Virus record (IMG/VR): IMGVR_UViG_3300013116_000108 | Coordinates: 62,001-126,000 of that record | Strand: one strand, 5' to 3' | Length of the DNA: 64,000 bases | Shown here: positions 4,244 to 59,007 of the stretch, piece after piece | Numbering within the stretch: the first letter of the stretch is position 1 | Layout of the letters: each line of letters opens with the position of its first letter | Notes under the pieces: generated by a model | Databases searched by the model: none | Told to the model about the DNA's origin: nothing | What the model saw: only the letters and a program-made list of their open reading frames with translations | Position numbers and translations under genes: made by a program

Positions 4244-4521
4244 TATCTCATTGCCTTATTCATTGATTGTACCCTGCGACTTGCTGGGTTAATACGTTTT
4301 GTTCTTCTAGATTTTAAAGCATTTCTTCTTTTATACTTTGCTTTAGTTATCATTAATTTAATACGTTTTTTAACGTTAGGTGCTTTATAACAAGCACCAG
4401 GTGTAGAGACAATTTTGCCTTTAAGCCTGCCTGTAGAACAGCGGTACTTACGGACAACTTTCTTGCCTGATCTGGCCCATGCCATTGTTGTTTCTAGTTG
4501 TGTAATTTCTTCGACTAGCAT
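4243..4521 (-). CDS. Small, very basic protein, probably virion-associated
   Basis: 92 aa, K/R-rich; starts MLVEEI; TAAATA-N5-ATG. Confidence 0.6.
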   Translation of the reverse strand: MLVEEITQLETTMAWARSGKKVVRKYRCSTGRLKGKIVSTPGACYKAPNVKKRIKLMITKAKYKRRNALKSRRTKRINPASRRVQSMNKAMR

Positions 4522-4526
4522 ACTTG

Positions 4527-4532
4527 TATTTA
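4527..4532 (-). promoter_or_regulatory. Late promoter TAAATA, 5 nt before ATG
   Basis: TAAATA-caagt-ATG (4521); no Shine-Dalgarno. Confidence 0.6.
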
Positions 4533-4542
4533 GTACGCGATA

Positions 4543-4806
4543 TTAATTAAGGATAATTAGTTGATAGGTCAAAAATGCCACTGCAGACACTAATGCTCCT
4601 ATTATACCAACTCCTATAGTCGTTACTTGTTTAGCACGACTTGTCTTATCTTTATACATAGCGTCACGTAACTCTACTAAAACTTCGTCCATTTTAGTCA
4701 TACGCTCGTCAATCGAGTCCAATTTCTCTTCCATTCTCTTATACCTTTCTGCACATAAATCAACGTGTGCCTCGAGGCTTTCTTTTTCAACGTCTAAAAC
4801 TGCCAT
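4543..4806 (-). CDS. Coiled-coil protein with one C-terminal TM helix (holin/XhlA-like architecture)
   Basis: EAHVDLCAERY heptads followed by IGVGIIGALVSAVAFLTYQLIIL. Confidence 0.5.
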   Translation of the reverse strand: MAVLDVEKESLEAHVDLCAERYKRMEEKLDSIDERMTKMDEVLVELRDAMYKDKTSRAKQVTTIGVGIIGALVSAVAFLTYQLIILN

Positions 4807-4844
4807 TGTGTCTTCTCACCTATGTATATCGTTAATTAGTGAGT

Positions 4845-4902
4845 TGCTACTATTACAATGCTATTGTGTTATGCCTATAAAGTTTGCCTATTGTGTTGCC
4901 TA
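4845..4902 (-). repeat. Five TAG(G)CA motifs with 12-14 nt period in the leader of the 4806 gene
   Basis: Plus-strand TGCTA at 4845 and 4859, TGCCTA at 4872, 4885 and 4897; CTATTGTGTT at 4861 and 4888. Confidence 0.7.
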
Positions 4903-4932
4903 CTAGTGTCAACTTGCTCTTCTAACCACAAG

Positions 4933-4938
4933 TATTTA
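4933..4938 (-). promoter_or_regulatory. Late promoter TAAATA
   Basis: Motif at the far end of the 135-nt intergenic leader. Confidence 0.5.
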
Positions 4939-4940
4939 TG

Positions 4941-5462
4941 CTAAACGTCTAAAGCATAACAGAGTGTATTTACTTTAACGCCTGTTGTAGCAAGGGTACT
5001 TGAAGTTAAATTTACTGTTTCTTGTAACCCTGTTAATACAGGTATAATATCTAACTGGTCTGTTAGTAATTTAACAGGATCATTGTCGCTACTAAAGATA
5101 TCAGGGGTTTCAAAGCCAAACTCCATAGTCCATACTTTGTGTTTTCCTTTGTAACCAAACCCTAACGAGCCTATACTAACAGTTTCACTAGTAGGCTCTT
5201 TTAACATAATAGGCTGAGCTCTAATAGAAATGCATTGTACAAGGGTTTCCCAGTTACGTTGCTCGTTCCTACTAATGTTCCATGTTTCTTGATTATTAAT
5301 AATATTTTTTAAATCGTCAACAAACGGCAAAGGTACATCTGCTCTAAATTCTGATATCATACCAGTAGCAGAAATATCTACTAATGTTTTAATTTGATAA
5401 TGGCTTCTTAGTGTTCCAAAATCATATCCTGTAGGTGAGCCGTGTGCTGTTCCTGATGTCAT
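4941..5462 (-). CDS. Hypothetical, probable structural protein
   Basis: 173-aa ORF in the late region. Confidence 0.5.
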   Translation of the reverse strand: MTSGTAHGSPTGYDFGTLRSHYQIKTLVDISATGMISEFRADVPLPFVDDLKNIINNQETWNISRNEQRNWETLVQCISIRAQPIMLKEPTSETVSIGSLGFGYKGKHKVWTMEFGFETPDIFSSDNDPVKLLTDQLDIIPVLTGLQETVNLTSSTLATTGVKVNTLCYALDV

Positions 5463-6547
5463 AATGTATACCTCTGTGAATTAAATGTTCCTTCGGCACT
5501 ACTAAACTCATAATCACTTCCGCATGTTCTTCCGCATGTAAATAACTTTGGATTACTGTCTGCCATTGTATTCTCCCAACTATCATTTAAATCTTTATTA
5601 TAAAAACTATGTTCTAATACTTGTTCTAAAGTGTACTTTTTTAATGAATTAAAATCTTTTCCGTATCTTTCTTGTATTTGTTTTATTTGCTTTTTTTGAA
5701 TATTATCCTCATCATCAAAATATGTAGGAGCACCTACCCAACAACAGGGCCATAAATTCATTTCAAAATCAATGTAAACAGTAGTATCTTTTTTATATTT
5801 ACATGTTATAGGAGTTTGATCGACGTAATTATTAAATGTTCCAAACTTATCTATAATTTGATCATACTTTGTTTTATTTTTATTTTCTTTACTGGAAATA
5901 ATGTTTTTATGTTTTGTTTCTATTTCCATTACTTTGTTAAAGTCACTTACTTTTACAAACCTACTAGTGTTTTTATAGTTAATACTTTTAAACCCCATTT
6001 CTTTTGCTAGTTCTTTTGCTTTTGCTACTTGGTGTATATTATGATCAAATATTAAATAATCCCAATTAGCGTTTCCACCTGCTTCAATAAATGCTGTAAT
6101 ATTTTCTTTTAATTTTTTCCAGTTACTATTAATACGATATAGATGGTTAGTATCTTCTAATCCATCTATACTAAAATCTACTCTATCAGTATCTCTATCT
6201 AAAATGTGTGCTATTCTAGTCCACCAAGCAGGAGATTGGGCACTACCATTTGTAACTACTGTAAGTCCTTGTACACCAGAATGTCTTATAAACTCTAAAC
6301 ATTCTAGAAAATTATTACTAGCAATACTATCACCGTAGTTGCCACACCAAAATATTCTTTTTATTTGTTTAGCAAAATCAGGTGTTAATATTCTTTTATA
6401 ATCATCAATAGTTAATTCACCCATTGGTAATATTGGGTTTTTATTACCGTTATTATCTACCCTAGCACATTGAGGACAAAGTAAATTACATTTACTAGTG
6501 TGTTCAATGTGCAATGTTGTGATTTCGCTAAGATTTAGATAATTCAT
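5459..6547 (-). CDS. Radical SAM enzyme with SPASM/twitch-like C-terminal domain
   Basis: CNLLCPQC (CxxxCxxC), WCGNYGD, VTNGS, FSIDG, WPCCW, CGRTC. Confidence 0.9.
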   Translation of the reverse strand: MNYLNLSEITTLHIEHTSKCNLLCPQCARVDNNGNKNPILPMGELTIDDYKRILTPDFAKQIKRIFWCGNYGDSIASNNFLECLEFIRHSGVQGLTVVTNGSAQSPAWWTRIAHILDRDTDRVDFSIDGLEDTNHLYRINSNWKKLKENITAFIEAGGNANWDYLIFDHNIHQVAKAKELAKEMGFKSINYKNTSRFVKVSDFNKVMEIETKHKNIISSKENKNKTKYDQIIDKFGTFNNYVDQTPITCKYKKDTTVYIDFEMNLWPCCWVGAPTYFDDEDNIQKKQIKQIQERYGKDFNSLKKYTLEQVLEHSFYNKDLNDSWENTMADSNPKLFTCGRTCGSDYEFSSAEGTFNSQRYTL

Positions 6548-6582
6548 TATATATGTACTTATCTAGTGTTGAACATGGGGTC

Positions 6583-6611
6583 AAAAAAATAGGCACTATA
6601 AAAGTGCCTAT
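6583..6611 (-). terminator. Rho-independent terminator
   Basis: Stem ataggcact/agtgcctat with T-run on the minus strand, after the 6642-6935 gene. Confidence 0.8.
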
Positions 6612-6641
6612 TTAAACTTCGGGAGGAAGTTTTAAGTTTTA

Positions 6642-6935
6642 TTAGTTAAAGTATGCAACTACTGCCGCCGTAACACCTGTTACGCCACCAAAGTTAGAAC
6701 CTGCCGCTGGAGCAACACCTTCTGATAGTACATGTACTACGTCTGAAGCGCCTGCGTTAAATCCACCTGTAGTGTCATCACCAATACCAACGATAGTCGC
6801 TGTTAATTGGATGTAAGCGATACATGAATCAAGCTCTGCTTGAGTTAAGTTTGATTTAGATAGGCTTGTAAGTGCTACCTCTTTACCAGCGAAGAATACA
6901 TCACCTGCGCCGTGAACTTTTGTTAAATCTGCCAT
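6642..6935 (-). CDS. Small Gly/Ala-rich probable structural (decoration-type) protein
   Basis: Own late promoter, strong GGAG RBS, own terminator, high-expression codon usage. Confidence 0.55.
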   Translation of the reverse strand: MADLTKVHGAGDVFFAGKEVALTSLSKSNLTQAELDSCIAYIQLTATIVGIGDDTTGGFNAGASDVVHVLSEGVAPAAGSNFGGVTGVTAAVVAYFN

Positions 6936-6989
6936 TTTAAGACTCCTTTTATTTTTGTGAACCCGTCAATAACTTTGCGGGCATACATA

Positions 6990-6995
6990 TATTTA
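6990..6995 (-). promoter_or_regulatory. Late promoter TAAATA followed by a 5' hairpin
   Basis: TAAATA, then CCCGCAA...TTGACGGG hairpin, then GGAG RBS. Confidence 0.55.
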
Positions 6996-7005
6996 GCCAA
7001 AACGG

Positions 7006-8921: not shown

Positions 8922-9527
8922 TTATTTTCCTAATTCTGCGGCTATTTCTTTTTTCGCAATTCTACCAGTTTTTGTGCCAACCCATTGGGCACCTTTCCAT
9001 TCGTACTCATTGCCGTCTGATGCTGTTTTCCTAGCACCTACTTGATTTTGAGCCGCTGTTGGATTTTCATCGCCTGCCGGTTTTGGCATAGGCTCACGTA
9101 TTTCTTTTCTTATTTTTTCAGGTAAATGTTTTTCAATTTGGTCTCTAAACAGTTCTGCCTCTTTTTCACTTTTAGGCTTTAATAATATTGCTGTTACAAT
9201 TCTAAATATAGCGTTAGCACCTTTAGTTCCTTGTGTGAAATTAATAGCACCGTTGTTCATTGCTTTTTTGTGATCTATATTAACTGAACTAGTTCCGTAA
9301 AATTTATCGATCCAAGCATTTAGTAATCCTTGAGGATTTACTTTAGCAAATTCTTGGTTCTTTTGAACAGCATGGCTCCAAAAAGCATAATGCTTTTCTA
9401 CCATTGATATTACTTCTCCAATTTGTCCTCCTTTACCAGAAAATCCTCCCGACAACTTTGAAGATTTTTTTTGTGCTTTTTGCCACTTATTAACGTATTT
9501 TTCTACGTCAATTTCACTAATTATCAT
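8922..9527 (-). CDS. Hypothetical, probable head/internal protein
   Basis: Starts MIISEI; short C-terminal module DGNEYEWKGAQWV. Confidence 0.5.
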   Translation of the reverse strand: MIISEIDVEKYVNKWQKAQKKSSKLSGGFSGKGGQIGEVISMVEKHYAFWSHAVQKNQEFAKVNPQGLLNAWIDKFYGTSSVNIDHKKAMNNGAINFTQGTKGANAIFRIVTAILLKPKSEKEAELFRDQIEKHLPEKIRKEIREPMPKPAGDENPTAAQNQVGARKTASDGNEYEWKGAQWVGTKTGRIAKKEIAAELGK

Positions 9528-9765
9528 TTTTTAACTTCCTAATACCTCTAGTAAACTTAATTGGTTCTTGTTTCTTGATTGCCGCTATAAATCTTTTTTC
9601 TAAATCTTGTGATACTTCTTCAGAAAAGTTTTCTTTAATCATTTTAATTAGATTAATTGATGATTGTATCAGGTGAGTTGCTCTACTTTCCACCACATGT
9701 TTTCGGTCTTTGTCGATCGCTATCGCATCTAGCTCTTCTAATAATGATCTAGTCTTATGTTTCAT
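9517..9765 (-). CDS. Hypothetical protein
   Basis: 82 aa; GGAG RBS; TAAATA at 9791-9800. Confidence 0.6.
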   Translation of the reverse strand: MKHKTRSLLEELDAIAIDKDRKHVVESRATHLIQSSINLIKMIKENFSEEVSQDLEKRFIAAIKKQEPIKFTRGIRKLKNDN

Positions 9766-9876
9766 TAAGAGTCTCCCTGTATAGTATAGTTATTTATTTA
9801 ATTTCGGATACTTGTTGAAAGATCTTAAAATTGTTTTTGCTCAATATTGGTTAAATACAAGTATTAAGGAGACCAT

Positions 9877-10605
9877 ATGAACAGAAGTAATCATTTTGCC
9901 AACCTTTCAGGATTGGTATATAGAGATTTTAATGCTGGCTTAACGGCTAAATTAAAAAAACTAGGTTATAGTAAAGTCAAATACGTTGATGTAAACGGTG
10001 CTCAAGCAATGATTTTAACTAATAATAAAGAACAAGTAATTGCTTTTAGGGGAACAGAGCCTAAGCAATTTAGTGATATTGCGGCAGACTTAAAAGCATG
10101 GAAAAGCAAGTCTAAAACAGAGGGCAAAGTACATGACGGGTTTTATGACGAAGTTAATAAAGTCTGGTCAAAAATAACACCGTTATTAAGCAAATCTAAA
10201 CCGTTGTTTATAACTGGACACAGTTTAGGTGGTGCTATGGCTACTATTGCCGCAAGTAGACTAGAAGATCAAACAGAATGCTTATATACGTTTGGATCTC
10301 CAAGAGTAGGTAATAAAAAATTTGTAGAAGGCTTAAAAGTAAAACATTATAGATGGCGTAATAACAATGATTTAGTTCCTACTGTTCCTATGGCTATTAT
10401 GGGATTTAAACATCACGGAACTTATTGCTACATTAACCATTACGGAAACATAAGAAATGGTTTGAGTAAATGGCAGAGATTTAAAGATTGGTGTAGAGGG
10501 CATTGGGCCGCTATTAAAAATCTTGAATTATTTGACGGAATAAGAGATCACGGGATACCCAACTACGTTAAGCATACGGCAAAAAATAAAGAAAGTAGTA
10601 ATTAA
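9877..10605 (+). CDS. Class 3 lipase (alpha/beta hydrolase)
   Basis: VIAFRGTE, VHDGF, ITGHSLGGA nucleophile elbow, YTFGSPRVG, NNNDLVP, terminal DH; AAGGAG RBS; TAAATA at 9852. Confidence 0.9.
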   Translation: MNRSNHFANLSGLVYRDFNAGLTAKLKKLGYSKVKYVDVNGAQAMILTNNKEQVIAFRGTEPKQFSDIAADLKAWKSKSKTEGKVHDGFYDEVNKVWSKITPLLSKSKPLFITGHSLGGAMATIAASRLEDQTECLYTFGSPRVGNKKFVEGLKVKHYRWRNNNDLVPTVPMAIMGFKHHGTYCYINHYGNIRNGLSKWQRFKDWCRGHWAAIKNLELFDGIRDHGIPNYVKHTAKNKESSN

Positions 10606-33503: not shown

Positions 33504-33560
33504 TATCGATTATCTATCCACTTGTTGACTTATTCTACAATATTTATTGTAAATACTTTT

Positions 33561-34445
33561 ATGAAGGTATCTTTCTTTACCAAAAACTCTAGCATCGCAG
33601 GTAAGCCAATATTTGAGGCTATGATGAATGCTGTTAGAAAAACTGATACAGTTGTAGAAAATACACTAGATGCCGATGTTGCTGTAATTTGGTCATTATT
33701 ATGGAACGGAAAAATGGCAGGAAATAGGGCCGTGTGGAATGAGTTTCACAAGCAAGGAAAACCTGTTGTAGTTTTAGAAGTTGGTGGTATAAACAGAAAT
33801 GTTACATGGAAAGTTGGAATAGATGGTATTAACGGTCGTGCTAATTTTTGTAACAAAGAAAACTTAGACATTGATAGGCCTAAACAGTTAGGTATAAAAT
33901 TAAAACCTTGGAACTTGCTTGGGGATAATATTATTATATGTGGGCAACACCAAAAAAGTGAACAATGGATCAACTTACCTCATATAGATCAATACTATGA
34001 AAATAGAATACTTGAAATAAAAAATCACACCGATGCTCAGATATTAATAAGAGATCATCCTCGTCATAAACGAGGAATACACTATAAAGAAGAAATTAAT
34101 TTAAAGAAAAAATATAATGTACAATATACAGATGCTATCCAAATAGAAGGTACATACGATAACTTTGATTTTACTAAAGCATTAGAAAATACAAAGTTAG
34201 TTGTTAGTGAAAGTAGCAATCCAGCAATGGAGGCTACTATAAATGGTGTAGCATCTTGGACTGGTCCTGAAAGTTTAACTTATCCTGTAAGTGTACACCC
34301 TAAGAACTTAGATAATTTAAGGCCTAATAGAGAACAATGGCTAATAGAATTAGCACATACTGAATGGACAGTTGAAGAGATTTCTAAAGGTATACCGTGG
34401 GCTAGATTGTTGAATAGTCTACAAGAGTACCGTCCAACCAACTAA
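33561..34445 (+). CDS. GT-B / capsule-synthesis-like glycosyltransferase (leaderless)
   Basis: IRDHPRH, VVSESSNPAMEATINGV; TAAATA (33550-33555), 5 nt, ATG. Confidence 0.65.
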   Translation: MKVSFFTKNSSIAGKPIFEAMMNAVRKTDTVVENTLDADVAVIWSLLWNGKMAGNRAVWNEFHKQGKPVVVLEVGGINRNVTWKVGIDGINGRANFCNKENLDIDRPKQLGIKLKPWNLLGDNIIICGQHQKSEQWINLPHIDQYYENRILEIKNHTDAQILIRDHPRHKRGIHYKEEINLKKKYNVQYTDAIQIEGTYDNFDFTKALENTKLVVSESSNPAMEATINGVASWTGPESLTYPVSVHPKNLDNLRPNREQWLIELAHTEWTVEEISKGIPWARLLNSLQEYRPTN

Positions 34446-37222: not shown

Positions 37223-37243
37223 AATTGCCTTCCTTGATTAATT

Positions 37244-37273
37244 AAAAGTGTAACAGACCGAAGCCTGTTACAC
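37244..37273 (-). terminator. Rho-independent terminator after gp32
   Basis: GTGTAACAG-gcTTCGgt-CTGTTACAC followed by TTTT. Confidence 0.85.
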
Positions 37274-37287
37274 TGACTTACTAAGAT

Positions 37288-44672: not shown

Positions 44673-44807
44673 CTATTTTATACTTCCGTTTAATACACGT
44701 TTACTATTAGGGTGCCTTTTTGCTGTAAACGTGGCGTGTGACATATTCTTTTTAATTCTTGGGACACCTTTTTTTACTATAATGCCCGGTACTGCTCTTT
44801 TTCCCAT
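44673..44807 (-). CDS. 44-aa highly basic peptide (absent from the ORF track)
   Basis: MGKRAVPGIIVKKGVPRIKKNMSHATFTAKRHPNSKRVLNGSIK*; TAATG overlap with the tctA stop. Confidence 0.65.
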   Translation of the reverse strand: MGKRAVPGIIVKKGVPRIKKNMSHATFTAKRHPNSKRVLNGSIK

Positions 44808-46310: not shown

Positions 46311-48539
46311 TTACTGAGTTGTTTTTCTTTTGTGAATAGATCTAGGAGTAGTTTGGTGTTCGTTTTTCTTAGGTCTTAATGCTTTGTTAGATGACATAAC
46401 ACCTGCTAACTTTTTCATATGATTGATAGACTCATCGGCGTCATCTTTTTCATCTTCAATCTCATCTTCAAGTTCTTTAGCAAGAGCGTCTGCCATTCCT
46501 TTTTTAAGAACTTCTTCTGGGTTTTTTGATTCATTAATATCTACACCAAAAGGAGCATCGCCAAAGAAATCTTCTAGTCTGCTTTGAACAATGTGTCTAA
46601 CGTCAAGTACGTCACCGCCATCTTCTGCACTATCTAGATCATCTAATAACTCATCATCAAATACAAAACCAGTTACCATGTTAGTTGTTTCTTCGCCTGG
46701 TGGACGAGGTTTAGACATAAACTCTTTGTATCTCGCTACAGCGTCTTCATGTTCGCCTTCTGGTTGACCATCATATTTCATTAGTCCGCCAATCATAGTA
46801 CCTTCAGCAACTTTTTTTGCTTCAATTTCTTCAACCGCCGCTTCGGCTTCAATTGGTAATTCTTTTGAATCATCTACTGCTTCATTTTTCATAGCCATCA
46901 TTTGATCCATATGTGTTTGGTAAGGTTGTCCATATTCTTTCATACCTGCTAACCAATTCCATATAGTAGGCCTAGCATCAGCATTAGGGTCAAGTTCACT
47001 TAATTGGTCATATAACTCATCATCACCAAATATTTCACCAATTTCATCTGTTGCGGCTTGACCTTCTTCGCCTGCTATAACAGGTGTTGACATAATTTCT
47101 TTAAACCTTGCTACATGTTCATCGCTTGATGGTAAATGCCACGTGCCTTCTTTTACAACTGAATCTGTCCATTTTTTAAATTCTGCTGATTCTTCTTGTG
47201 GCTTCATTTTATATTTAGGATCAAAGTCTTGTACTTCTACATCACCTTTAAGCCACTTACTAGCAATAGCAATCGCCATTTCTTTATCATGCTTATTATT
47301 AAAACTGTCATCAATATTAAAAATTGCTCTTGCTAAATCATCGTCTTTTGTACGAACTGAAATTGTTGCTAAGATTCTTCTAACTAAAGCATGTAATGGG
47401 TTTTCTGTATGATCTAAGCCTTGTGAATCGTTTGGCTTTTTAAACTTGTTTGCTTTAACAAAGGCAAGTTGCTTTTTAATTAAAGCATCTTCTTCTTCGT
47501 TTGGTGTTACAACAATTTTCTTTTTACCTTGAATAATATCATGAATTGGGCCCATGTCTTCGTGTACTTTTCTTCTTGCTTTAAGTACTGTAGGTAACAA
47601 ACTTTCTAGTTCTGTTTGATCAACTGTTCTAACTAATTGACTCTTTAGTTCGTTAATGTCTGATTCGTCATATACTGATTCTGTAGGCTGAAAGTTTTCA
47701 GCATAAGTCTTATAACCTTTTGGTTTTGAAAGAGTGTTAACTGTTGCTTTCAAACCTTGGTAACGTTTCTTAGCATCAGAAATAATATCAGCAGAATCTT
47801 CGTTAACAAACCCGTCAGCACGATTTAATTTTTTAACAAAGTTTCTTAATTCATACATTTCTTTAACACATTCAATAATGTGAGAACCTAGTTCGTCATG
47901 TGGATTGCCTCCTGCATGAACATGTCTTGCCATTGCTCTAGCACCTGGTAAATATTTGAAAGGAAATTTAAATCTTTCCTTGGCACTATTCTCAATAAAG
48001 ACTGATTGTATTTGTCTACTTCTAGATCCCATTTTATCTTCATCTACTGCTGATCTGTGTTTTATAATTAACCTTGCTGACTCAACTGTTTGGTAACTTG
48101 TTTTAGTTGAACCATATAATTTGCTGACTGATTCCATTGTAATTTCATCCGTTGTATATTGAGAACTATTTTTAGTAATAGCCTCATAATCTCGTTTGTC
48201 TAACTGATTTTTGCCTATGTTTCTTACATCAAAATTCATCATGTTTTTCTTAGCAAACATTCTCATTTCTTTTAAGAAATCAAACCAACTACGTTGTATT
48301 GAATCTGGTAAGTCACCGCTCAAACTTTCAGCAAAATAAATTGTAAAGTTAGCAGGATCAATAATACTAATTGTTACAGGTCCGTACTTTTCTCCTTCAA
48401 CAACATAGTTAAAATCAAACAATCTTGCTTGTTCTGACTCTAATACAGCACCTGCACCTTCATCTGCTATGTTTACTTCACCAAATTTACTGGCTAAATT
48501 TTGATATAATGTGTCGGCTATTTTTTTAATCAGTTCCAT
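46311..48539 (-). CDS. Large modular late protein, probably head/internal
   Basis: 742 aa; leaderless late promoter; next to the terminase; acidic modules. Confidence 0.55.
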   Translation of the reverse strand: MELIKKIADTLYQNLASKFGEVNIADEGAGAVLESEQARLFDFNYVVEGEKYGPVTISIIDPANFTIYFAESLSGDLPDSIQRSWFDFLKEMRMFAKKNMMNFDVRNIGKNQLDKRDYEAITKNSSQYTTDEITMESVSKLYGSTKTSYQTVESARLIIKHRSAVDEDKMGSRSRQIQSVFIENSAKERFKFPFKYLPGARAMARHVHAGGNPHDELGSHIIECVKEMYELRNFVKKLNRADGFVNEDSADIISDAKKRYQGLKATVNTLSKPKGYKTYAENFQPTESVYDESDINELKSQLVRTVDQTELESLLPTVLKARRKVHEDMGPIHDIIQGKKKIVVTPNEEEDALIKKQLAFVKANKFKKPNDSQGLDHTENPLHALVRRILATISVRTKDDDLARAIFNIDDSFNNKHDKEMAIAIASKWLKGDVEVQDFDPKYKMKPQEESAEFKKWTDSVVKEGTWHLPSSDEHVARFKEIMSTPVIAGEEGQAATDEIGEIFGDDELYDQLSELDPNADARPTIWNWLAGMKEYGQPYQTHMDQMMAMKNEAVDDSKELPIEAEAAVEEIEAKKVAEGTMIGGLMKYDGQPEGEHEDAVARYKEFMSKPRPPGEETTNMVTGFVFDDELLDDLDSAEDGGDVLDVRHIVQSRLEDFFGDAPFGVDINESKNPEEVLKKGMADALAKELEDEIEDEKDDADESINHMKKLAGVMSSNKALRPKKNEHQTTPRSIHKRKTTQ

Positions 48540-48544
48540 ATTAT

Positions 48545-48550
48545 TATTTA
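48545..48550 (-). promoter_or_regulatory. Late promoter, 5 nt before ATG
   Basis: TAAATA-ataat-ATG (48539). Confidence 0.6.
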
Positions 48551-48554
48551 TCCT

Positions 48555-50132
48555 TTAAATGATTACAAACGGCATAGGCTCTATATAGTCGTCTTCAGTT
48601 GATCTCATGTCTTGTTGAATTTTTGGGTCGTATGTACCTAAAAATGTTGCTATTCTTAATGCTAGTACCGTTGCCATAACTAAATCATCATGCTCACCCG
48701 GCTTACCTTGATAACTATTGCCACTTGCTACAAAAGTTTTTAATTGTGTTATAAGAGGTTTACTATACACTACCAGTTTTTGATTTTCTACTAGTTCTTT
48801 TAACTTGGCACAAGAAGCCAATTTACTTTTGTGTGTTGTATTAAATCCTTTTCTAAAGCGCCTAACGTGTCCACTCCTAGCAGGTTCACTCATAAAATAT
48901 CCATGAATTGCTTCTTCCCCTACTTCTGCTATAGAAACAAGTGCGGCTTCACCTAATGTGTTGTTCTCTACACTATAATAAATGTTATTATTGTCATTTG
49001 TAATACCATAAATGTATTTTGTAATTTGCTTTAATATTGTAATTTGTTCTTGTATTGTAGTTTTATTATGTTGCCATTCAGCACATTGTTTCATACCAGG
49101 CAATTCAAAAACTTGTATGGCTGAATAGTCGCCTCCTGTTCCTAAACTAGGATCTAAACCTACAACATACGTTTTTCCTTTTTTAGGTTTATGATACCAA
49201 CGAACTTGACCTTGTTTATATAAAGGGTCATTGCCTTCTAAACTTGCTAATATAATAGGGTTAATTAATGTTTCATCAAATATGATTGGTTCACATTCGT
49301 GTTCACGTTTGAATCGTTCAATGCCAATCCTTCCGCGTTCTTCGTCTGCCCAATCTTTATCTCTATCAGGATGTTCACTCCATAGTGCCTTAAAGGCATG
49401 AAAGCCATTAACACCTACACCGCCTTCGTTTTCATTACCAAAGTTGTCTAATGTTTTATTTGCTTCTGTCCATAATAACCAAAACTGATCTTCGTCTGAG
49501 TTAGGTGTTGAAGTAATAATCGCTTTACCACCTGTTGCTAGTGTAGGTGATATCGATGTCCAAAACTCTGTAGCAATGTTATTCCTCACAAAAGCAAACT
49601 CATCACAGTATAGCATTGTAATGGACATACCTCTTCCTGTGTTTTCTGTAGTTGCTTGTGATACAATTCTACTACCATTCTCAAATTCTATCGATCCTCT
49701 GTTGTAATTTGTAACACCTGCTCTAATAAAATCAGGACAAAGTTCATATCCGTATCTAACACGTTGCATAATTTCTTGAGCGCCGGCGTGTTTATGTGCC
49801 GCAACTAGTATTACACTATCAGGAACAAACATAGCATACCAAAGCAAGTATCCAGCCGCTGTGGTAGTTTTACCCATTTGTCTGCTTACTAAGTTAATAC
49901 TAAATCTGTTTTTATGGTAACTGTCTAGTAATGTTTCTTGGAAATCATAAGGATCGTATTTAATTTTACCTTGTGTAGGATGTTGTATAAAGAAATAATG
50001 TTCAAGAAAGTACGTTGGCCCAGATACTGGATCAGCACACTTCATAAATTCTTCAAGTTGCTCTTCAGTAAACTGCTGGCCTTTATTGGCTTTTTTGATT
50101 AATACACCATCTAGTGATTTATTAGTAGACAT
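48555..50132 (-). CDS. terL: Terminase large subunit (T4 gp17-like)
   Basis: SRQMGKTT, YCDEFAF, ITSTPN, VGLDPSLG, HDDLVMA. Confidence 0.95.
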   Translation of the reverse strand: MSTNKSLDGVLIKKANKGQQFTEEQLEEFMKCADPVSGPTYFLEHYFFIQHPTQGKIKYDPYDFQETLLDSYHKNRFSINLVSRQMGKTTTAAGYLLWYAMFVPDSVILVAAHKHAGAQEIMQRVRYGYELCPDFIRAGVTNYNRGSIEFENGSRIVSQATTENTGRGMSITMLYCDEFAFVRNNIATEFWTSISPTLATGGKAIITSTPNSDEDQFWLLWTEANKTLDNFGNENEGGVGVNGFHAFKALWSEHPDRDKDWADEERGRIGIERFKREHECEPIIFDETLINPIILASLEGNDPLYKQGQVRWYHKPKKGKTYVVGLDPSLGTGGDYSAIQVFELPGMKQCAEWQHNKTTIQEQITILKQITKYIYGITNDNNNIYYSVENNTLGEAALVSIAEVGEEAIHGYFMSEPARSGHVRRFRKGFNTTHKSKLASCAKLKELVENQKLVVYSKPLITQLKTFVASGNSYQGKPGEHDDLVMATVLALRIATFLGTYDPKIQQDMRSTEDDYIEPMPFVII

Positions 50133-50137
50133 ATATG

Positions 50138-50143
50138 TATTTA
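50138..50143 (-). promoter_or_regulatory. Late promoter, 5 nt before the terL ATG
   Basis: TAAATA-catat-ATG (50132); no SD. Confidence 0.6.
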
Positions 50144-50149: not shown

Positions 50150-50178
50150 AAAAAGCCAGGTATATTACAACCTGGCTT
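50150..50178 (-). terminator. Rho-independent terminator
   Basis: AAGCCAGG/CCTGGCTT stem with T-run on the minus strand. Confidence 0.75.
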
Positions 50179-52664: not shown

Positions 52665-52691
52665 GTTAGATTGCCTTATAATATAAGGTAT

Positions 52692-53518: not shown

Positions 53519-53527
53519 AATTTATTC

Positions 53528-54619: not shown

Positions 54620-54623
54620 TTAA

Positions 54624-55250
54624 TTAACCTGTAATTGTCTGGCTTCTTGTTTTAGATACTGCTGATCCTATACCTGCTCCGTTATTACCAACCGGTAACT
54701 GTACAGCATTGTCAAATCTAATTGACATAGTAATATTTGCTGGCTCCGAAGATGCATAGTTTAAATCGTTATAGTTTACGTTCTCAATGTAACAACCGTA
54801 TAGTTCCCACTCTTCTAAAGTAATTGGAGCCGCTGAACCGTTGCCACCATCTAATAACTCAAAACGTGTTAAGAACTTATAATCAATACCAGAAGAAGCA
54901 GATGCTTGTTCCATAAAGTCAAATTGTCTTTGAACTTGTTCGCCAACTAATTTTGATACGTTGCTTGAAACATCATCTCTGATGTTAACTGATACTGGAT
55001 CCCAGGTATGCTTACCAATAATGTTAACTTTTGAGTTATAAACATCTACTGGAATTTGTTCAAAGTTGACACTTGGTCTTGTAATGTCCATAACTTGCTT
55101 AGTAAGTTCTGATCTTGACGATGTTACCCCAAAGTTTTCAAAACTCACTCTAAAGCGATATTTTAGTTTTGGCATTAACAGACCTTGTGAACTAGCACTT
55201 TGTCCGCCTGCTATAGGAACTGTAAACTTACTTAATGAACCTACTGACAT
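54624..55250 (-). CDS. gp19: Tail tube protein (gp19-like)
   Basis: YRFRVSF, RPSVNF, GKHTWDPVSVNIRDD, EEWELYGC, IRFDNA. Confidence 0.88.
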   Translation of the reverse strand: MSVGSLSKFTVPIAGGQSASSQGLLMPKLKYRFRVSFENFGVTSSRSELTKQVMDITRPSVNFEQIPVDVYNSKVNIIGKHTWDPVSVNIRDDVSSNVSKLVGEQVQRQFDFMEQASASSGIDYKFLTRFELLDGGNGSAAPITLEEWELYGCYIENVNYNDLNYASSEPANITMSIRFDNAVQLPVGNNGAGIGSAVSKTRSQTITG

Positions 55251-55301
55251 AATATGTCTCCTTTATTATTAATACAATATTATTTATCTTATCAACTGAC
55301 C

Positions 55302-55330: not shown

Positions 55331-55350
55331 TTCAATGTTTTTGTTAATTA

Positions 55351-58300
55351 TTACCCGGATATAGAACCTGTGTTTTGGATTCTAACAGGTATGTAAATAA
55401 ACTCTACTGATTTAACAGGTTCAACAGCAACGTCTAGATATAATTCATTTCTGTCTATTCTTGCTGATGTGTTATTAGTTTCATCACATACTACCAAGTA
55501 ATCATATAAACCTCTTTTAGAAACTAAGTCGTTCATTAGTGATTCTACAACACCTTTGATTTCGTCCCTAGTTAACTTGTCATTTGGTTCAAATACAAAT
55601 GGTTTTGTAATTTCGCCTAGTCTTTCTCTGATATATGCTACAAGTCTTGCTACGTTGATTCTATCTAACGCTGAAGCAGAACCATGTCTAGTTTTGTTAC
55701 CAAAGTTAAGTATACCAACACCTGGGAAGAATGCGATTGGATTAATCTTATTCTCATATAAAGTATCTCTTAAAGATTCTTTAATACCAACTGTTTGGAA
55801 TTCACCAGTAGCACTATCAATGTGTCCTAACGCTGTAGCATTATCTACGCCACCTCGTCTTGTGCCTGCTGGAGCAAACCATGGAAAACTAGCATCATCT
55901 GAACGTAACATTGTTCTCAATGCCATGTGTGTTGGAGGAACAACAATTCCGTTACCATCTAAGTCTGTAGTTCTACCCGATGGATAAAACACACCTAAAT
56001 ATGTATCTGCTGTTACTAGTCCATTTTCATTGTTATCAATAGCAAGTTTTGTGTTATTAGCCCAATTTTGTATATCAGTACTATTTGGTGCTAGTCTCAT
56101 TGGAGCATCTCCAAGAACAAAGCCTGTATTTCGTCTTTCATTATTAAGTGCTACTAAGTTAGCCATTAGTTCTGGATATCCAGGAGCAACTAATAAGTTA
56201 AAGTTACGTTGTTCTTCACGTATCTCATCTGATGAAGTTACCGCTGACTTCATTGCGGAAACAATAGTATTACGCTGAGCATGTCTACCTACAAACGGAG
56301 CACCGTCATTTTGTATTCCTGATACAGTTACCCAAGCATTTGTTTCTGTTGGTAAAGTTTTACCTGGGAAGTCAGTAGCATTAAAGTACGCTTTCTTGTA
56401 TTCTTTAACGTTATTTGAGCTACGTCTTAAGTTAAATGCTAACATACCTCTTGGATACAATGCGGCACTTGGAGCATCAATATCTGTGTAGTCACTTGTT
56501 AACAATGTTTTAATTGGTGTCATAGTTGATGTTGTTACATCATCTGTAGCACTATCATGGAACCTAAAGTCAGCAAATAAAATACCATCTTCTGACGTTT
56601 GGTCTGTAGTATCAATTGCTACCCATTTATCTTCTGAAGCAACTGATTCCCATCTACTAATTTTAAAAGTATCTGGGTCAGAGGTGTCAATCCAAAGGTC
56701 GCCATATACAAGTGCTGTATTATCAGACTGTACTAGTGGCTCTGTTGCTGACACAATTGGTCCATCTGGTGAAGTGTTAGATAAGTTAAATCCTCTAGCA
56801 TCTGTAGTAACACCTTGGTATCCTTTCCAAGTAACACCATCATGTATCATAATATCCGCATCACTAACTGCGGCGTTAAACCATTTAGTTCCGTCTGCCG
56901 GATCTGCTGTTGGTTGTGTAGTACTTGCTGAGTAAGTGTAAGTTTGCCAATTAGATACAATTATATCTGAATTGTTGCCTGCTCTTGCTGTAGTTAAAGA
57001 AGCAGTAATACCAGCATCAACAACTGGAGTTCCAGTAGCATCTTTAAGAACAATAACACCACCTAAGTCGTGTGTTAATGTAATAGCATTTGTTGTAGTA
57101 TCTCTCGAAACTGACAAGTTAGCAATATTTGCCGCTGTTACACCACTTACAAAATCTTCGGCAGTTTTTGCTCCAGATCCTGGTATAGTAACTGTTACCG
57201 CTGATGTTAATGTTGCCGTTTTGTCTGACATTTGAATAGTAAATGTTTCACCGCCTGTAAATGCCGGACTTGCTGTACCTGTTACACTAGTAACACCTTT
57301 AGCAATTCTCTTGAAGAATTTATAACTTCCTCTACCATTATCTTCAGCGTCTTGCTTAACGTATATTGTATCAGCCGCTACATTAATTCCGCCACCTGCT
57401 TTATCTAAACCATAGTTTGCTGACTCGTCGTTAGCATATATTGGAGCCGCATTTGCTTCAAATAGTTTAGTATTAGCGTTATAAGTTTTTAGACTAAAGT
57501 CAGCACCTTTATTAGGTGTTGTTGTTTTAATCCAAACAGACCCTGTTGGTCTTGTATAAGTGTCTGCTGTTTTCCATTCCGGAATTGATGTGTGTTCTGC
57601 AAAATCAAATTTTGGAGACCAATATCTTCCAGCAGTTAATCCACAAACTGTGAGGATAGTTCCTGTACCATTTGCTATTAATACTGATCCAGTGTTGCCA
57701 CCGCCTCCGCCATCAGCAGTGGCATTAGCATAAATTTCTAATTTGTTATTAACAACTGCCGCTGAAACGCCTGCTTCGCCGGCACCTGAAATATCAGCCG
57801 CTAGTGATGTTGCTGAAGTACCTGAGGCTGTAACTGTAGTTCCGTTAATAACAATAGTGTGTCCAGCAACAATAGTTGGTGAACTTTCTGTTCCTGTTAC
57901 AGTTGGGTGTGATGTTTGCCAAGCAGGTGAACCTACGTGTACCCAAATATTTCCGCTGTTTTTGTAAAACAATGGATTTTTAGTGTTTGTAGCATCAATG
58001 GCATATTCGCCAATTGAACCATAAGAACTCTTAGGAACTGATGCTGAAATATCATTTGAGTCAGTAATTATTTTTGGTACTACGTTAGCAAACTTTTGTG
58101 TGGACTCGTTCCAAACATGAACTCCAAATAAAGTCTTGCTAATATCAAACCATGCCGTTCCTGCCGCAGGTGCCCCAGAAGGTCTACCTGAAGAAGTAGA
58201 TAGTTGACCTAAATCAACATCTGCCCTTGTTACATACGCTCTATTACTGACACCTAGTACGCTGTAGGCCGCCATAAGTCCGTATTCGTTAACTTCACTA

Positions 58301-58557
58301 CCGTGTAGTGCTGTTCCACTTGTATTTTTATGGAAAGTAGGCTCTCCATAAGTTGTTACTAATTCTCTTTGCGAACCTATTAAATAAGTCTTTCCCGCAT
58401 TTGCTTTTGTAGTACCTGCCGCTGTTCCTGTGCTAGTACCACTTGTTTTGTCTTGGGCTGTTGCGATAACAATTAGAGGAATCGTTCCAACTGCCGTTGG
58501 AGCGTATTGCGATTCGTCTGTAATTGTAACGTCAATACCTGGTGATATAAGTGCCAT
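55351..58557 (-). CDS. gp18: Contractile tail sheath protein (gp18-like)
   Basis: MALISPGIDV, PWFAPAGTRRG, INPI, DRINVARL, FVFEPND, AVEPVKSVEFIYIP. Confidence 0.95.
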   Translation of the reverse strand: MALISPGIDVTITDESQYAPTAVGTIPLIVIATAQDKTSGTSTGTAAGTTKANAGKTYLIGSQRELVTTYGEPTFHKNTSGTALHGSEVNEYGLMAAYSVLGVSNRAYVTRADVDLGQLSTSSGRPSGAPAAGTAWFDISKTLFGVHVWNESTQKFANVVPKIITDSNDISASVPKSSYGSIGEYAIDATNTKNPLFYKNSGNIWVHVGSPAWQTSHPTVTGTESSPTIVAGHTIVINGTTVTASGTSATSLAADISGAGEAGVSAAVVNNKLEIYANATADGGGGGNTGSVLIANGTGTILTVCGLTAGRYWSPKFDFAEHTSIPEWKTADTYTRPTGSVWIKTTTPNKGADFSLKTYNANTKLFEANAAPIYANDESANYGLDKAGGGINVAADTIYVKQDAEDNGRGSYKFFKRIAKGVTSVTGTASPAFTGGETFTIQMSDKTATLTSAVTVTIPGSGAKTAEDFVSGVTAANIANLSVSRDTTTNAITLTHDLGGVIVLKDATGTPVVDAGITASLTTARAGNNSDIIVSNWQTYTYSASTTQPTADPADGTKWFNAAVSDADIMIHDGVTWKGYQGVTTDARGFNLSNTSPDGPIVSATEPLVQSDNTALVYGDLWIDTSDPDTFKISRWESVASEDKWVAIDTTDQTSEDGILFADFRFHDSATDDVTTSTMTPIKTLLTSDYTDIDAPSAALYPRGMLAFNLRRSSNNVKEYKKAYFNATDFPGKTLPTETNAWVTVSGIQNDGAPFVGRHAQRNTIVSAMKSAVTSSDEIREEQRNFNLLVAPGYPELMANLVALNNERRNTGFVLGDAPMRLAPNSTDIQNWANNTKLAIDNNENGLVTADTYLGVFYPSGRTTDLDGNGIVVPPTHMALRTMLRSDDASFPWFAPAGTRRGGVDNATALGHIDSATGEFQTVGIKESLRDTLYENKINPIAFFPGVGILNFGNKTRHGSASALDRINVARLVAYIRERLGEITKPFVFEPNDKLTRDEIKGVVESLMNDLVSKRGLYDYLVVCDETNNTSARIDRNELYLDVAVEPVKSVEFIYIPVRIQNTGSISG

Positions 58558-58601
58558 ATTATTTTTTCCTCACTTTAAAAAGTTTAAATTATTATACATT
58601 G

Positions 58602-58607
58602 TATTTA
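58602..58607 (-). promoter_or_regulatory. Late promoter of the sheath gene
   Basis: TAAATA 45 nt upstream of the ATG; GAGG RBS. Confidence 0.55.
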
Positions 58608-58674
58608 GCGATTAATGGTAAAAAACGTCAAAATAGATGCCCTTTATAAAGGGCACCAGCGTATAAATACTCGT

Positions 58675-59007
58675 ATGGGCAGGCCTATATGTATCACTTG
58701 TAACGCTCCAGCGGCGGTTAATTATAAAAGAAAAGATAAAACTTATTATCGTAGGTTTTGTGATAGTTGTATACGAGAGCAAAAAAAGCCTAATAGATTT
58801 AAATTACATGGTTATCAAAAACAAAGCACATGTGACCATTGCGGATATCACAGCAAATTTCCTGAAGTTTTTTTAATATGGTATTTAGATGGGAATAAAA
58901 GTAATACTAGAATAGCCAACCTTAAAACAGTATGTAAAAACTGCGAAGTTACTCTAGCGAGGCTTGGATGGTCAAAGATTGCTGGCGATCTAACACCTGA
59001 TCAATAG
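58675..59007 (+). CDS. Zn-finger/HNH-like protein (leaderless; HNH His apparently replaced)
   Basis: CITC...CDSC...CDHC...WYLDGNKSN...NLKTVCKNC; TATAAATA (58662-58669), 5 nt, ATG. Confidence 0.65.
   Translation: MGRPICITCNAPAAVNYKRKDKTYYRRFCDSCIREQKKPNRFKLHGYQKQSTCDHCGYHSKFPEVFLIWYLDGNKSNTRIANLKTVCKNCEVTLARLGWSKIAGDLTPDQ

What the first reader, a model, noticed from the sequence alone, without database searches (positions are those of the whole stretch)
4519..58677. Recurrent TAAATA-N5-ATG: leaderless late mRNAs, including the terminase
Seen in sequence: exactly 5 nt separate TAAATA from the ATG, with no SD, at 4521, 33561, 48539, 50132 (terL) and 58675. A variant (TAAGTA-N8) precedes the radical SAM gene at 6547. 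Other TAAATA sites lie 20-150 nt upstream and have normal RBSs. Established: T4 late transcription starts a few nt downstream of TATAAATA. Inference: the phage uses two classes of late mRNA, with leaderless ones for low-copy proteins. Leaderless translation may suit stressed ribosomes and hints at a host that translates such mRNAs well.
Basis: partly seen in the sequence, partly recalled or inferred. Interest (0 to 1): 0.6.

Follow-up and report, generated by a model that had tools for sequence, protein, structure and literature searches.

The report
Leaderless genes behind phage promoters
In this marine giant phage and hundreds of its uncultured relatives, many genes (including the DNA-packaging terminase) begin exactly where a promoter should start the RNA, so their messages probably have no ribosome-binding leader. 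This has not been described for T4-type late promoters, and no RNA start has yet been mapped.

Summary
TAAATA-N5-ATG occurs 6 times in the window, which is not significant alone (2.9 expected). Genome-wide (204 kb), 11 of 12 such ATGs open long ORFs, against about 1.6 at any other spacing (P about 1e-6). Relatives fetched from IMG/VR give 128 unique TAA[A/G]TA-N5-ATG gene starts and almost none at N9-N12.

All five listed sites are conserved in relatives (33561 only in close ones). Where the same gene is not N5, the motif usually sits 18-30 nt upstream, in most cases with a Shine-Dalgarno (SD) sequence between.

TAAATA precedes sheath, tube, adaptor and virion genes. The genome encodes a gp55-like late sigma factor. 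In T4 geometry (box at -13 to -6), N5 puts the A of ATG at +1.

Leaderless geometry is not special to late genes: consensus sigma-70 promoters abut start codons of early genes at N5-N6, also conserved. The "low-copy" idea is compatible with the data but unproven. The "stressed ribosome" idea has no support.

T4 and PA5oct lack the N5 spike. No transcription start site (TSS) was mapped; metatranscriptome contigs are only weakly consistent. I rate it a new variant of known kinds.

The parts
50130..50143 (-). TAAATA (50143-50138), N5, then the ATG (50132-50130) of the terminase large subunit gene (48555-50132).
   Evidence: terL was identified (about 52% aa identity to PA5oct terL). In-frame stop 4 codons upstream. 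Most of the 80 relatives carry TAAATA/TAAGTA-N5-ATG here and the N-terminus is conserved from residue 1-4.
50153..50178 (-). Intrinsic terminator hairpin with T-run, ending 9 nt before the terL TAAATA. RNA from upstream should stop here, so terL RNA must start within the last 17 nt before ATG.
   Evidence: 9-bp stem, 5 GC pairs, T-rich tail; sequence; the hairpin is conserved in L002 and L004.
48537..48550 (-). TAAATA-N5-ATG of the 742-aa virion structural protein gene (46311-48539), 15 nt after the terL stop codon.
   Evidence: phrog_13484. ATAAATA-N5-ATG is conserved in most relatives. The exceptions carry TAAATA about 18-25 nt upstream plus an SD. The AGGA at -15..-12 is not conserved.
4519..4532 (-). 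TAAATA-N5-ATG of a 92-aa ORF (4243-4521) of unknown function.
   Evidence: Among 47 unique relative upstream sequences (52-62% aa identity), 24 are N5 as scored, 7 more scored as 'upstream' are N5 on inspection, 12 are N8 and 2 are N4.
33550..33563 (+). TAAATA-N5-ATG of a 294-aa ORF (33561-34445). It sits back to back with a minus-strand TAAATA (33546-33541) that serves the divergent gene 32634-33503.
   Evidence: N5 is conserved in relatives of 78-100% identity, and the N-terminus MKVSFF is conserved, so the start is not the upstream TTG at 33522. Relatives at 38-45% identity either carry TAAATA 18-28 nt upstream or show no motif.
58662..58677 (+). TATAAATA-N5-ATG of a 110-aa HNH-endonuclease-like ORF (58675-59007), just after a palindromic hairpin (58636-58657).
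   Evidence: weak HNH PHROG hits. In relatives the in-frame upstream ATG (58615) is absent or blocked by stops, while the box and spacing are kept.
6545..6584 (-). TTGACC, 17 nt, TAAGTA, N8, then the ATG of the radical SAM gene (5459-6547). The leader would be at most 3 nt.
   Evidence: Pfam Radical_SAM. The TTGAC and the GATAAGTA-N8 stretch are conserved in 10 of 11 relatives while the 17-nt spacer varies.
6982..6995 (-). TAAATA-N5-ATG that opens only 11 codons. It most likely acts as the leadered late promoter of the 97-aa gene 6642-6935, which has an AAAGGAG SD. A leaderless mini-ORF is not excluded.
59609..59647 (-). Perfect sigma-70 consensus: TTGACA, N18, TATAAT, N6, then the ATG of the dNMP kinase gene (58949-59611). 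Early-type leaderless geometry.
   Evidence: phrog_139. Relatives have either TATAAT-N5..7-ATG without SD, or the promoter about 21-29 nt upstream with AAGGA.
61864..61900 (-). TTGACT, N17, TATAAT, N5, then the ATG of a TonB-dependent-receptor-like gene (60100-61866).
   Evidence: Pfam Plug + TonB_dep_Rec_b-barrel. The geometry and the signal-peptide-like N-terminus are conserved in 69-98% relatives, which carry a terminator directly upstream of the -35.
547..584 (-). TTGACA, N17, TATACT, N6, then the ATG of a 227-aa ORF that runs off the window's left end.
58558..58607 (-). Leadered late promoter: TAAATA 44 nt upstream of the tail sheath ATG (58557), with a GAGGA SD.
   Evidence: sheath phrog_10581, E 2e-228.
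55251..55286 (-). Leadered late promoter: TAAATA 30 nt upstream of the tail tube gene (54624-55250), with an AAGGAG SD.
   Evidence: phrog_4542.
62680..62709 (-). Leadered late promoter: TAAATAC 24 nt upstream of the head-tail adaptor gene (61918-62679), with an AGGA SD.
   Evidence: phrog_211.
9766..9879 (.). Divergent leadered late promoters. TAAATA at 9791-9800 (-) serves the virion protein gene 9517-9765. TAAATAC at 9852-9857 (+) serves gene 9877-10605. Both genes have SDs.
2465..2500 (-). Leadered late promoter: TATAAATA 28 nt upstream of the virion structural protein gene 1397-2464, with an AAGGG SD.

Best explanation
TAAATA (accepted variant TAAGTA) is the -10-like core of this phage's late promoter, read by host RNA polymerase carrying a phage gp55-like sigma factor.

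The promoter is used in two layouts:
- In about four fifths of cases it lies 18-45 nt before the start codon, most with an SD sequence in between.
- In about one fifth it lies exactly 5 nt before the ATG. Transcription then begins on the A of ATG and the mRNA has no leader.

Such an mRNA cannot use SD pairing. It would be translated through recognition of its 5'-terminal AUG, the route described for lambda cI mRNA.

The phage uses the same trick with host-type sigma-70 promoters of early genes (TATAAT-N5/6-ATG). Leaderless expression is therefore a general property of this phage clade, and by implication of its host's translation system, rather than a late-gene speciality.

Shown: the motif, its spacing statistics, its conservation, absence of SD, association with virion genes, and presence of the sigma factor. 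Inferred: the exact RNA 5' ends, which sigma factor reads the motif, and the mode of translation.
For: 1. Spacing spike. In the genome, 11 of 12 TAAATA-N5-ATG open long ORFs, against 1.63 at other spacings (P = 1.2e-6).

2. Independent replication in relatives. There are 128 unique TAA[A/G]TA-N5-ATG gene starts. N9-N12 hold almost none (1, 0, 0, 0) and a second mode begins at about N15. A gap of this kind is expected if a leader must be either absent or long enough to hold an SD.

3. The same gene occurs in either layout, with few intermediates. terL, the 742-aa gene and the 92-aa gene are N5 (sometimes N4-N8) without SD in most relatives. In the others the motif sits about 18-25 nt upstream, usually with an SD.

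4. SD cores are found in 1 of 11 N5 genes (random level 11%) and in 63% of other genes. In relatives the figures are 10 of 128 against 74 of 132.

5. Geometry. The T4 box spans -13 to -6 (PMC2988020), so N5 gives +1 = A. Sigma-70 promoters, whose -10 hexamer I take from textbook knowledge to end at -7, peak at N6 (14) and N5 (6), with none from N7 to N10 and only two isolated cases between N7 and N19. The two promoter types thus show the one-base offset their known geometries predict.

6. Leadered TAAATA sites show T and A enrichment at N5 and N5+1 (19 and 22 of 38).

7. A terminator ends 9 nt before the terL box.

8. TAAATA precedes sheath, tube, adaptor and virion protein genes. Sigma-70 consensus promoters precede the dNMP kinase gene and an auxiliary gene.

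9. A gp55-like sigma factor is encoded: phrog_12791 E 3e-78, phrog_234 E 1.8e-24, and 28% identity to T4 gp55 over 113 aa.

10. N-termini are conserved from residue 1, and one is signal-peptide-like, which fixes the start codons.

11. TAAATA and TAAGTA are both depleted genome-wide (observed/expected 0.62 and 0.63), while TATAAT and TTGACA are not.

12. Controls: T4 and PA5oct show no N5 spike (1 and 2 sites) and only leadered modes.
Against: No transcription start site has been mapped.

The only RNA data are assembled metatranscriptome contigs. They cannot show 5' ends and may contain DNA. Near-identical pieces stop 16 and 21 nt inside terL and the 742-aa gene, and none crosses the promoters. 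That is compatible with the model but weak.

The sliding-clamp co-activator (gp45 family) was not found, but the record is only about 56% complete. gp33 was not searched for.

Which sigma factor reads TAAATA is inferred, not shown. The radical SAM promoter has a conserved TTGAC 17 nt upstream of TAAGTA, so host sigma-70 may read at least some of these sites.

N4, N6, N7 and N8 variants exist (26, 15, 20 and 11 in relatives), so some mRNAs would carry 1-3 nt leaders. The 742-aa gene could also be translated from the terL transcript.

In relatives at about 40% identity, the 294-aa gene has the motif 18-25 nt upstream with little visible SD.
Confidence: 0.78

Rival explanations
1. TAAATA/TAAGTA at N5 is not a promoter but an A/T-rich, SD-independent ribosome-loading or enhancer element on longer, polycistronic mRNAs.
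For: The motif is A/T-rich and sits where a ribosome would contact the mRNA. The 742-aa gene lies only 15 nt after terL with no terminator between them. No TSS data exclude this.
Against: The identical motif, with the same flanks, occurs 18-45 nt upstream of other genes that have their own SD. An RBS-like element would not be expected at that distance. Spacing is bimodal with an empty N9-N12 zone. Full sigma-70 consensus promoters show the same abutting layout, one base further away, as promoter geometry predicts. A terminator sits directly before the terL site. The phage otherwise uses SD at 63% of genes.
Confidence: 0.06
2. The sites are promoters that give leaderless mRNAs, but they are read by the host's primary sigma factor as weak -10-only, or -35 plus TAAGTA, promoters. 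They would then not be 'late' in the T4 sense.
For: The radical SAM promoter has a conserved TTGAC exactly 17 nt upstream of TAAGTA. Positions -13/-12 of the T4 box are not conserved here. The clamp co-activator was not found.
Against: TAAATA matches only 3 of 6 positions of TATAAT and lacks the T at the last position. Most sites have no -35. The motif is tied to virion genes, whereas true TTGACA/TATAAT promoters precede nucleotide-metabolism and auxiliary genes. A gp55-family sigma factor is encoded. T4 relatives with other bases at -13/-12 are on record (PMC2988020).
Confidence: 0.12
3. One reading: leaderless layout is a dosage device that keeps low-copy late proteins (terminase, nuclease) low, while SD-led mRNAs make abundant virion proteins.
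For: In the window the N5 genes are terL, an HNH-like nuclease, one virion protein and two small unknowns. Sheath, tube and adaptor are SD-led. From general knowledge, leaderless mRNAs are translated weakly in E. coli.
Against: Early genes, including dNMP kinase and an outer-membrane-receptor-like gene, are leaderless too. terL is SD-led in several relatives. Copy numbers of three of the five proteins are unknown. Nothing is known of leaderless efficiency in the unidentified host.
Confidence: 0.3
4. Chance or compositional artefact of an AT-rich genome.
For: The window count alone is not significant (6 against 2.9).
Against: Genome-wide P = 1.2e-6. 128 unique cases in relatives with a sharp N5 peak. 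Per-gene conservation while flanks diverge. T4 and PA5oct controls are flat.
Confidence: 0.01

Closest known systems
T4 late promoters (TATAAATA, read by gp55 with gp33 and the gp45 clamp)
   Same: An A/T box at the -10 position with no -35 element, upstream of virion genes on either strand. A gp55-family sigma factor is encoded. The core TAAATA equals positions -11 to -6 of the T4 box, and variation at -13/-12 is known in T4 relatives.
   Different: In T4 the box lies about 13-28 nt or more before start codons (mode N28) and N5 is not enriched. Here about a fifth of boxes abut the ATG at N5. TAAGTA is an accepted variant. The sigma homologue is 307 aa against 185 aa and only 28% identical over 113 aa. 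No clamp was found in the partial genome.
Leaderless phage mRNAs from sigma-70 promoters, such as lambda cI from PRM (from general knowledge, not tested here)
   Same: The promoter -10 element is placed so that +1 is the A of AUG, and there is no SD. The window's dNMP kinase, TonB-receptor-like and 549 genes have exactly this layout.
   Different: Those are isolated cases, mostly of repressor genes. Here it is systematic: dozens of genes, both early and late classes, conserved across a clade.
Genome-wide leaderless transcription in Actinobacteria and Deinococcus-Thermus, as modelled by GeneMarkS-2 (Lomsadze 2018; from general knowledge, seen here only as a reference-list entry in PMC9004378)
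   Same: A -10-like box a fixed few nt upstream of start codons, coexisting with SD-led genes. Leader lengths are bimodal.
   Different: That is a cellular feature read by the primary sigma factor. Here the box is a phage late-promoter motif, the phage's own early promoters are canonical TTGACA/TATAAT, and the host is unknown.
Pseudomonas jumbo phage PA5oct and the Rak2-like group (closest cultured relatives by terL, about 52% aa identity)
   Same: Similar gene order around terL: tube, head closure, structural genes, terL, structural genes. TAAATA motifs lie upstream of some structural genes.
   Different: PA5oct genes there are SD-led. N5 is not enriched (2 sites, mode N22-25). Its paper reports only TATAATA/TTGAC promoters and no leaderless mRNAs (PMC7318152).

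Membership tests
T4-type (gp55-dependent) late promoter | A/T-rich TATAAATA-like box at -10 with no conserved -35 element | tested here: met
   The core TAAATA (or TAAGTA in relatives) is invariant. Positions -13/-12 are variable (G/C/A, then A/T/C). There is no -35 at most sites. Exception: the radical SAM promoter has TTGAC 17 nt upstream.
T4-type (gp55-dependent) late promoter | Located upstream of late (virion and packaging) genes | tested here: met
   Sheath, tube, adaptor, several virion structural proteins and terL carry it. Intergenic enrichment is 55 of 233 sites in 4.2% of the genome.
T4-type (gp55-dependent) late promoter | Phage encodes a gp55-family sigma factor | tested here: met
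   G000:C1 about 162.6-163.5 kb (-), 307 aa: phrog_12791 E 3e-78, phrog_234 E 1.8e-24, BLASTP to T4 gp55 E 1e-8. It lies outside the window.
T4-type (gp55-dependent) late promoter | Co-activation by gp33 and the sliding clamp gp45 | tested here: inconclusive
   phrog_223 (gp45) gave no match at E <= 1, but the record is estimated only 56% complete. gp33 was not searched for.
T4-type (gp55-dependent) late promoter | Transcription starts about 6 nt downstream of the box, late in infection | not testable with these tools
   Indirect evidence only: T/A preference at N5/N5+1 in leadered sites and the N5 spike. RNA contigs cannot show 5' ends.
Leaderless mRNA | RNA 5' end coincides with, or lies within a few nt of, the start codon | not testable with these tools
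   Inferred from promoter geometry and the terminator 9 nt upstream of the terL box. Metatranscriptome contigs end 16-21 nt inside the ORFs and none spans the promoters.
Leaderless mRNA | No Shine-Dalgarno sequence before the start codon | tested here: met
   1 of 11 (genome) and 10 of 128 (relatives) have a 4-nt SD core. Random level is 11%; ordinary genes 63% and 56%.
Leaderless mRNA | The start codon is AUG and is the true N-terminus | tested here: met
   All 11 convincing N5 sites use ATG. In-frame stops lie 4-36 codons upstream of the five window sites. N-termini are conserved from residue 1-4 in relatives.
Genome-wide non-SD initiation (Bacteroidetes-type) | Most genes lack SD, and promoters are of the TTTG / TAnnTTTG type | tested here: not met
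   63% of genes have an SD core. Early promoters are canonical TTGACA-N17-TATAAT.

The most novel reading that the evidence does not exclude
A whole clade of uncultured marine T4-superfamily giant phages makes roughly a fifth of its early and late proteins from true leaderless mRNAs in an SD-using, probably Gram-negative host. The phage's own ribosomal protein bS21 (encoded at G000:C1 about 42.9-43.2 kb) might retune host ribosomes to balance 5'-AUG against SD initiation. That would amount to a phage-directed choice of initiation mode.
Probability: 0.15. Interest if true: 0.85.

Novelty: new variant of a known kind. Interest (0 to 1): 0.62.

Why it matters
1. It gives a simple, testable rule for a large group of uncultured marine phages. 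A TAA[A/G]TA box 5 nt, or a TATAAT box 6 nt, before an ATG marks both a transcription start and a translation start. Gene callers that expect an SD are likely to mis-place such starts; for example the longest-ORF rule picks TTG 33522 instead of ATG 33561.

2. It joins two textbook systems that I did not find described together in the searchable literature: gp55-type late promoters and leaderless translation.

3. It predicts that the unknown host translates 5'-terminal AUGs well. That narrows host hypotheses and can be tested.

4. Leaderless genes need their own promoter, which may explain why late promoters are so densely spaced and why the promoter core is depleted elsewhere in the genome.

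Tried and rejected
- **Window-only statistics** are too weak to decide, so I used genome-wide and comparative counts.
- **Metatranscriptomes.** The only RNA holders were assembled contigs. They show that near-identical phage RNA or DNA is present, but give no 5' ends. Not used as support beyond "compatible".
- **Host inference.** The two bacterial MAG contigs that carry the TctA homologue (labelled Legionellales and Weeksellaceae) are syntenic phage contigs. They say nothing reliable about the host. The bS21 look-alikes are viral clusters. There are no tRNA genes in the window.
- **Identity of the 742-aa protein.** No Pfam family and no PDB sequence match. Only a PHROG "virion structural protein" hit, so it is not shown to be the portal.
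- **Clamp and initiation factors.** The gp45 clamp, IF3 and IF1 families were not found in the 56%-complete record. Absence is not informative.
- **Literature.** PA5oct has no reported late motif or leaderless mRNAs. phiKZ and AR9 report no leaderless transcripts. No paper in the library combines "leaderless" with TATAAATA. My recollection that Thermus phage P23-45 has leaderless middle/late mRNAs could not be verified in the library.
- **TATAAT overlapping the radical SAM ATG** was rejected as that gene's promoter, because it overlaps the start codon.

Full report
**What the window is.** The window is bases 62,001-126,000 of a 204,100-bp, 34.7% GC virus record, estimated about 56% complete. 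The record comes from marine metagenomes. Its large terminase is about 52% identical to those of Pseudomonas jumbo phage PA5oct and about 50% to Sinorhizobium and Agrobacterium jumbo phages. No close relative is in the phage collection. IMG/VR holds hundreds of related contigs.

**Checking the observation.** A sixth lies at 6982-6995. The window count is not significant on its own: 6 against 2.9 expected, and 7 of 100 shuffles reach it.

The signal lies in what the ATGs are. Genome-wide, 12 TAAATA-N5-ATG exist and 11 of them open at least 60 codons near the 5' limit of their reading frame. Any other spacing from 0 to 30 gives 0-4, with a mean of 1.63 (Poisson P = 1.2e-6). No single-base variant of the hexamer behaves this way. 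TAAATA is about 13 times enriched in intergenic DNA (55 of 233 copies in 4.2% of the genome). Overall it is depleted: 78 against 151 in window shuffles, and observed/expected 0.62 by a maximal-order Markov estimate. TAAGTA is depleted likewise (0.63), while TATAAT and TTGACA are not.

**Is TAAATA a late promoter?** Leadered copies lie 19-54 nt upstream of the tail sheath, tail tube, head-tail adaptor and several virion structural protein genes. Most of these have an AAGG/AGGA-type SD core between motif and ATG.

The genome encodes a 307-aa gp55-family protein outside the window. It matches phrog_12791 "sigma factor for late transcription" at E 3e-78 and the T4 gp55 family phrog_234 at E 1.8e-24. 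It is 28% identical to T4 gp55 over 113 aa. A gp45-type clamp was not found, but the record is incomplete.

The T4 review places the 8-bp box at -13 to -6 and notes relatives with other bases at -13/-12 (PMC2988020). The core TAAATA therefore corresponds to -11 to -6, and five further bases put the next one, the A of ATG, at +1. Leadered copies also favour T and A at N5 and N5+1 (19 and 22 of 38).

**Comparative test.** This is the strongest evidence.

- Upstream of terL, most of 80 relatives (62-100% aa identity) carry TAAATA or TAAGTA exactly 5 nt before the ATG, with no SD. A minority have the motif further upstream, most with an SD.
- The gene after terL (742 aa here) shows ATAAATA-N5-ATG in most relatives. 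The exceptions have the box about 18-25 nt upstream with AGGAA-type SDs.
- The 92-aa gene is N5 in most relatives and N8 in a quarter.
- The 294-aa gene is N5 in close relatives. This fixes its start at ATG 33561 rather than the upstream TTG.
- For the HNH-like gene, the in-frame upstream ATG is not conserved, but the box and spacing are.

Pooled over the relatives fetched with terL, the TonB-receptor-like gene and dNMP kinase, unique TAA[A/G]TA-to-ATG distances are: N4 26, N5 128, N6 15, N7 20, N8 11, N9-N12 1/0/0/0. A second broad mode begins at about N15. SD cores occur in 10 of 128 N5 starts against 74 of 132 leadered ones. In the genome the figures are 1 of 11 against 63%, with a random level of 11%.

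A gap between "no leader" and "leader long enough for an SD" is what a promoter would give. A ribosome-binding element would not.

Canonical sigma-70 promoters also abut start codons:

- TTGACA-N18-TATAAT-N6-ATG at the dNMP kinase gene (59611)
- TTGACT-N17-TATAAT-N5-ATG at a TonB-dependent-receptor-like gene (61866)
- TTGACA-N17-TATACT-N6-ATG at 549

Several more lie elsewhere in the genome. Both window genes that were checked keep this layout in relatives, or switch to a leader of 21-29 nt with an SD. Pooled distances peak at N6 (14) and N5 (6), with none from N7 to N10 and only two isolated cases between N7 and N19.

The one-base difference between the two promoter types (N5 against N6) matches their known geometries: the late box ends at -6 and the sigma-70 hexamer at -7 (the -7 figure is textbook knowledge, not taken from a tool result). 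This is an internal consistency check on +1 being the A of ATG. It also shows that leaderless expression is not a late-gene speciality.

**Local anatomy.** A strong terminator (50178-50153, minus strand) ends 9 nt before the terL box. terL RNA must therefore begin inside the last 17 nt before the ATG, unless the terminator is read through.

The radical SAM gene has TAAGTA-N8-ATG, giving a leader of at most 3 nt. A conserved TTGAC lies 17 nt upstream while the spacer varies. Host sigma-70 may read this one.

The site at 6984 opens only 11 codons. It most likely serves as the leadered promoter of the next gene.

**Controls.** The same ORF-aware spacing count gives N5 = 10 here, 1 in T4 (leadered mode at N28) and 2 in PA5oct (mode N22-25). 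The PA5oct paper reports only TATAATA/TTGAC promoters and nothing leaderless.

**RNA evidence.** Only assembled metatranscriptome contigs were available. In run X13, near-identical pieces cover 49873-50116 and 48314-48518. They stop 16 and 21 nt inside terL and the 742-aa gene. No contig in four RNA runs crosses either promoter. This is compatible with starts at the ATG, but contigs cannot show 5' ends and DNA carry-over is possible.

**Interpretation.** The best reading (confidence about 0.78) is that the phage places its late promoter, and some early promoters, so that transcription starts on the start codon. The resulting leaderless mRNAs would be translated by 5'-AUG recognition.

It is weakened by leaderless early genes and by SD-led terL in some relatives. 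Nothing here bears on "stressed ribosomes".

The host is unresolved. The two bacterial MAG contigs with the TctA homologue are phage contigs. The use of SD and of TTGACA/TATAAT promoters argues against a Bacteroidetes-type host.

**Novelty.** Leaderless mRNAs and T4-type late promoters are each well known. I found no report of their systematic combination, nor of leaderless transcripts in jumbo phages. phiKZ and AR9 report none. I therefore rate it a new variant of known kinds. It is of real interest for gene calling in marine phages and for phage translation biology, but it awaits TSS mapping.

Noticed in passing
window 60100-61866 (-): The phage encodes a 588-aa TonB-dependent-receptor-like protein (Pfam Plug + beta-barrel) with a signal-peptide-like N-terminus. 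It is expressed from a consensus sigma-70 promoter with leaderless geometry. It is conserved at 69-98% identity in 8 other IMG/VR contigs. An outer-membrane receptor is an unusual auxiliary gene for a phage.
   Followed up: partly
window 44807-46246 (-): A TctA-family tricarboxylate transporter subunit (Pfam E 1e-97) sits inside the structural and packaging region. Its only hits in bacterial genomes are two MAG contigs (labelled Legionellales and Weeksellaceae) that are syntenic with the phage, so they are probably mis-binned phage DNA.
   Followed up: partly
G000:C1:42895-44393 (outside the window; L176:1435-2933, minus strand): A 101-aa ribosomal protein bS21 homologue (Pfam 57.7 bits, above cut-off) lies next to a 397-aa protein that looks ClpX-like by eye (zinc-finger and AAA+ motifs; no family scan was run). 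Nearest bS21 clusters in the ESM Atlas are viral. It may be relevant to translation initiation, but no link to leaderless mRNAs was tested.
   Followed up: partly
whole genome; window counts: The late-promoter cores TAAATA and TAAGTA are each depleted to about 0.62 of the maximal-order Markov expectation. TATAAATA occurs 3 times in the window against 14 expected. TATAAT and TTGACA are at expectation. This suggests selection against stray late promoters.
   Followed up: partly
window 33541-33555: Two divergent TAAATA boxes form a near-palindrome (TATTTA, TTG, TAAATA) in a 57-nt intergenic region. One serves a leaderless gene on the plus strand. The other serves a gene on the minus strand through a 37-nt leader without a clear SD.
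   Followed up: no
window 6545-6584 (-) and L348-L358: The radical SAM promoter combines a conserved TTGAC -35-like element with TAAGTA at 17-nt spacing, right after a terminator T-run. It may be a hybrid or middle-type promoter.
   Followed up: partly
L263, L267, L274, L282 and others; L040, L045, L051: A recurrent minor class has the box 8 nt before the ATG, which predicts 3-nt leaders. N7 and N4 classes also exist. Whether such very short leaders are translated like true leaderless mRNAs is open.
   Followed up: no
L084 (PA5oct NC_071039.1, 130.4-132.0 kb): PA5oct has TAAATA boxes 22-24 nt upstream of two virion protein genes next to terL. Its ORF-aware TAAATA-to-ATG spacing has a leadered mode at N22-25. 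Its paper lists no late promoter motif, so a gp55-type late motif may have gone unreported there.
   Followed up: partly
window 6940-6984 (-): An 11-codon ORF (MPAKLLTGSQK) starts at TAAATA-N5-ATG, upstream of the SD-led 97-aa gene 6642-6935. It could be a leaderless mini-ORF or just the first bases of a leader.
   Followed up: no
window 36134-38295 (-): Replication and recombination genes sit between structural blocks: a RecA-like gene (72% nt identity to Klebsiella jumbo phage recA) and a single-strand DNA-binding protein gene (phrog_1192).
   Followed up: no
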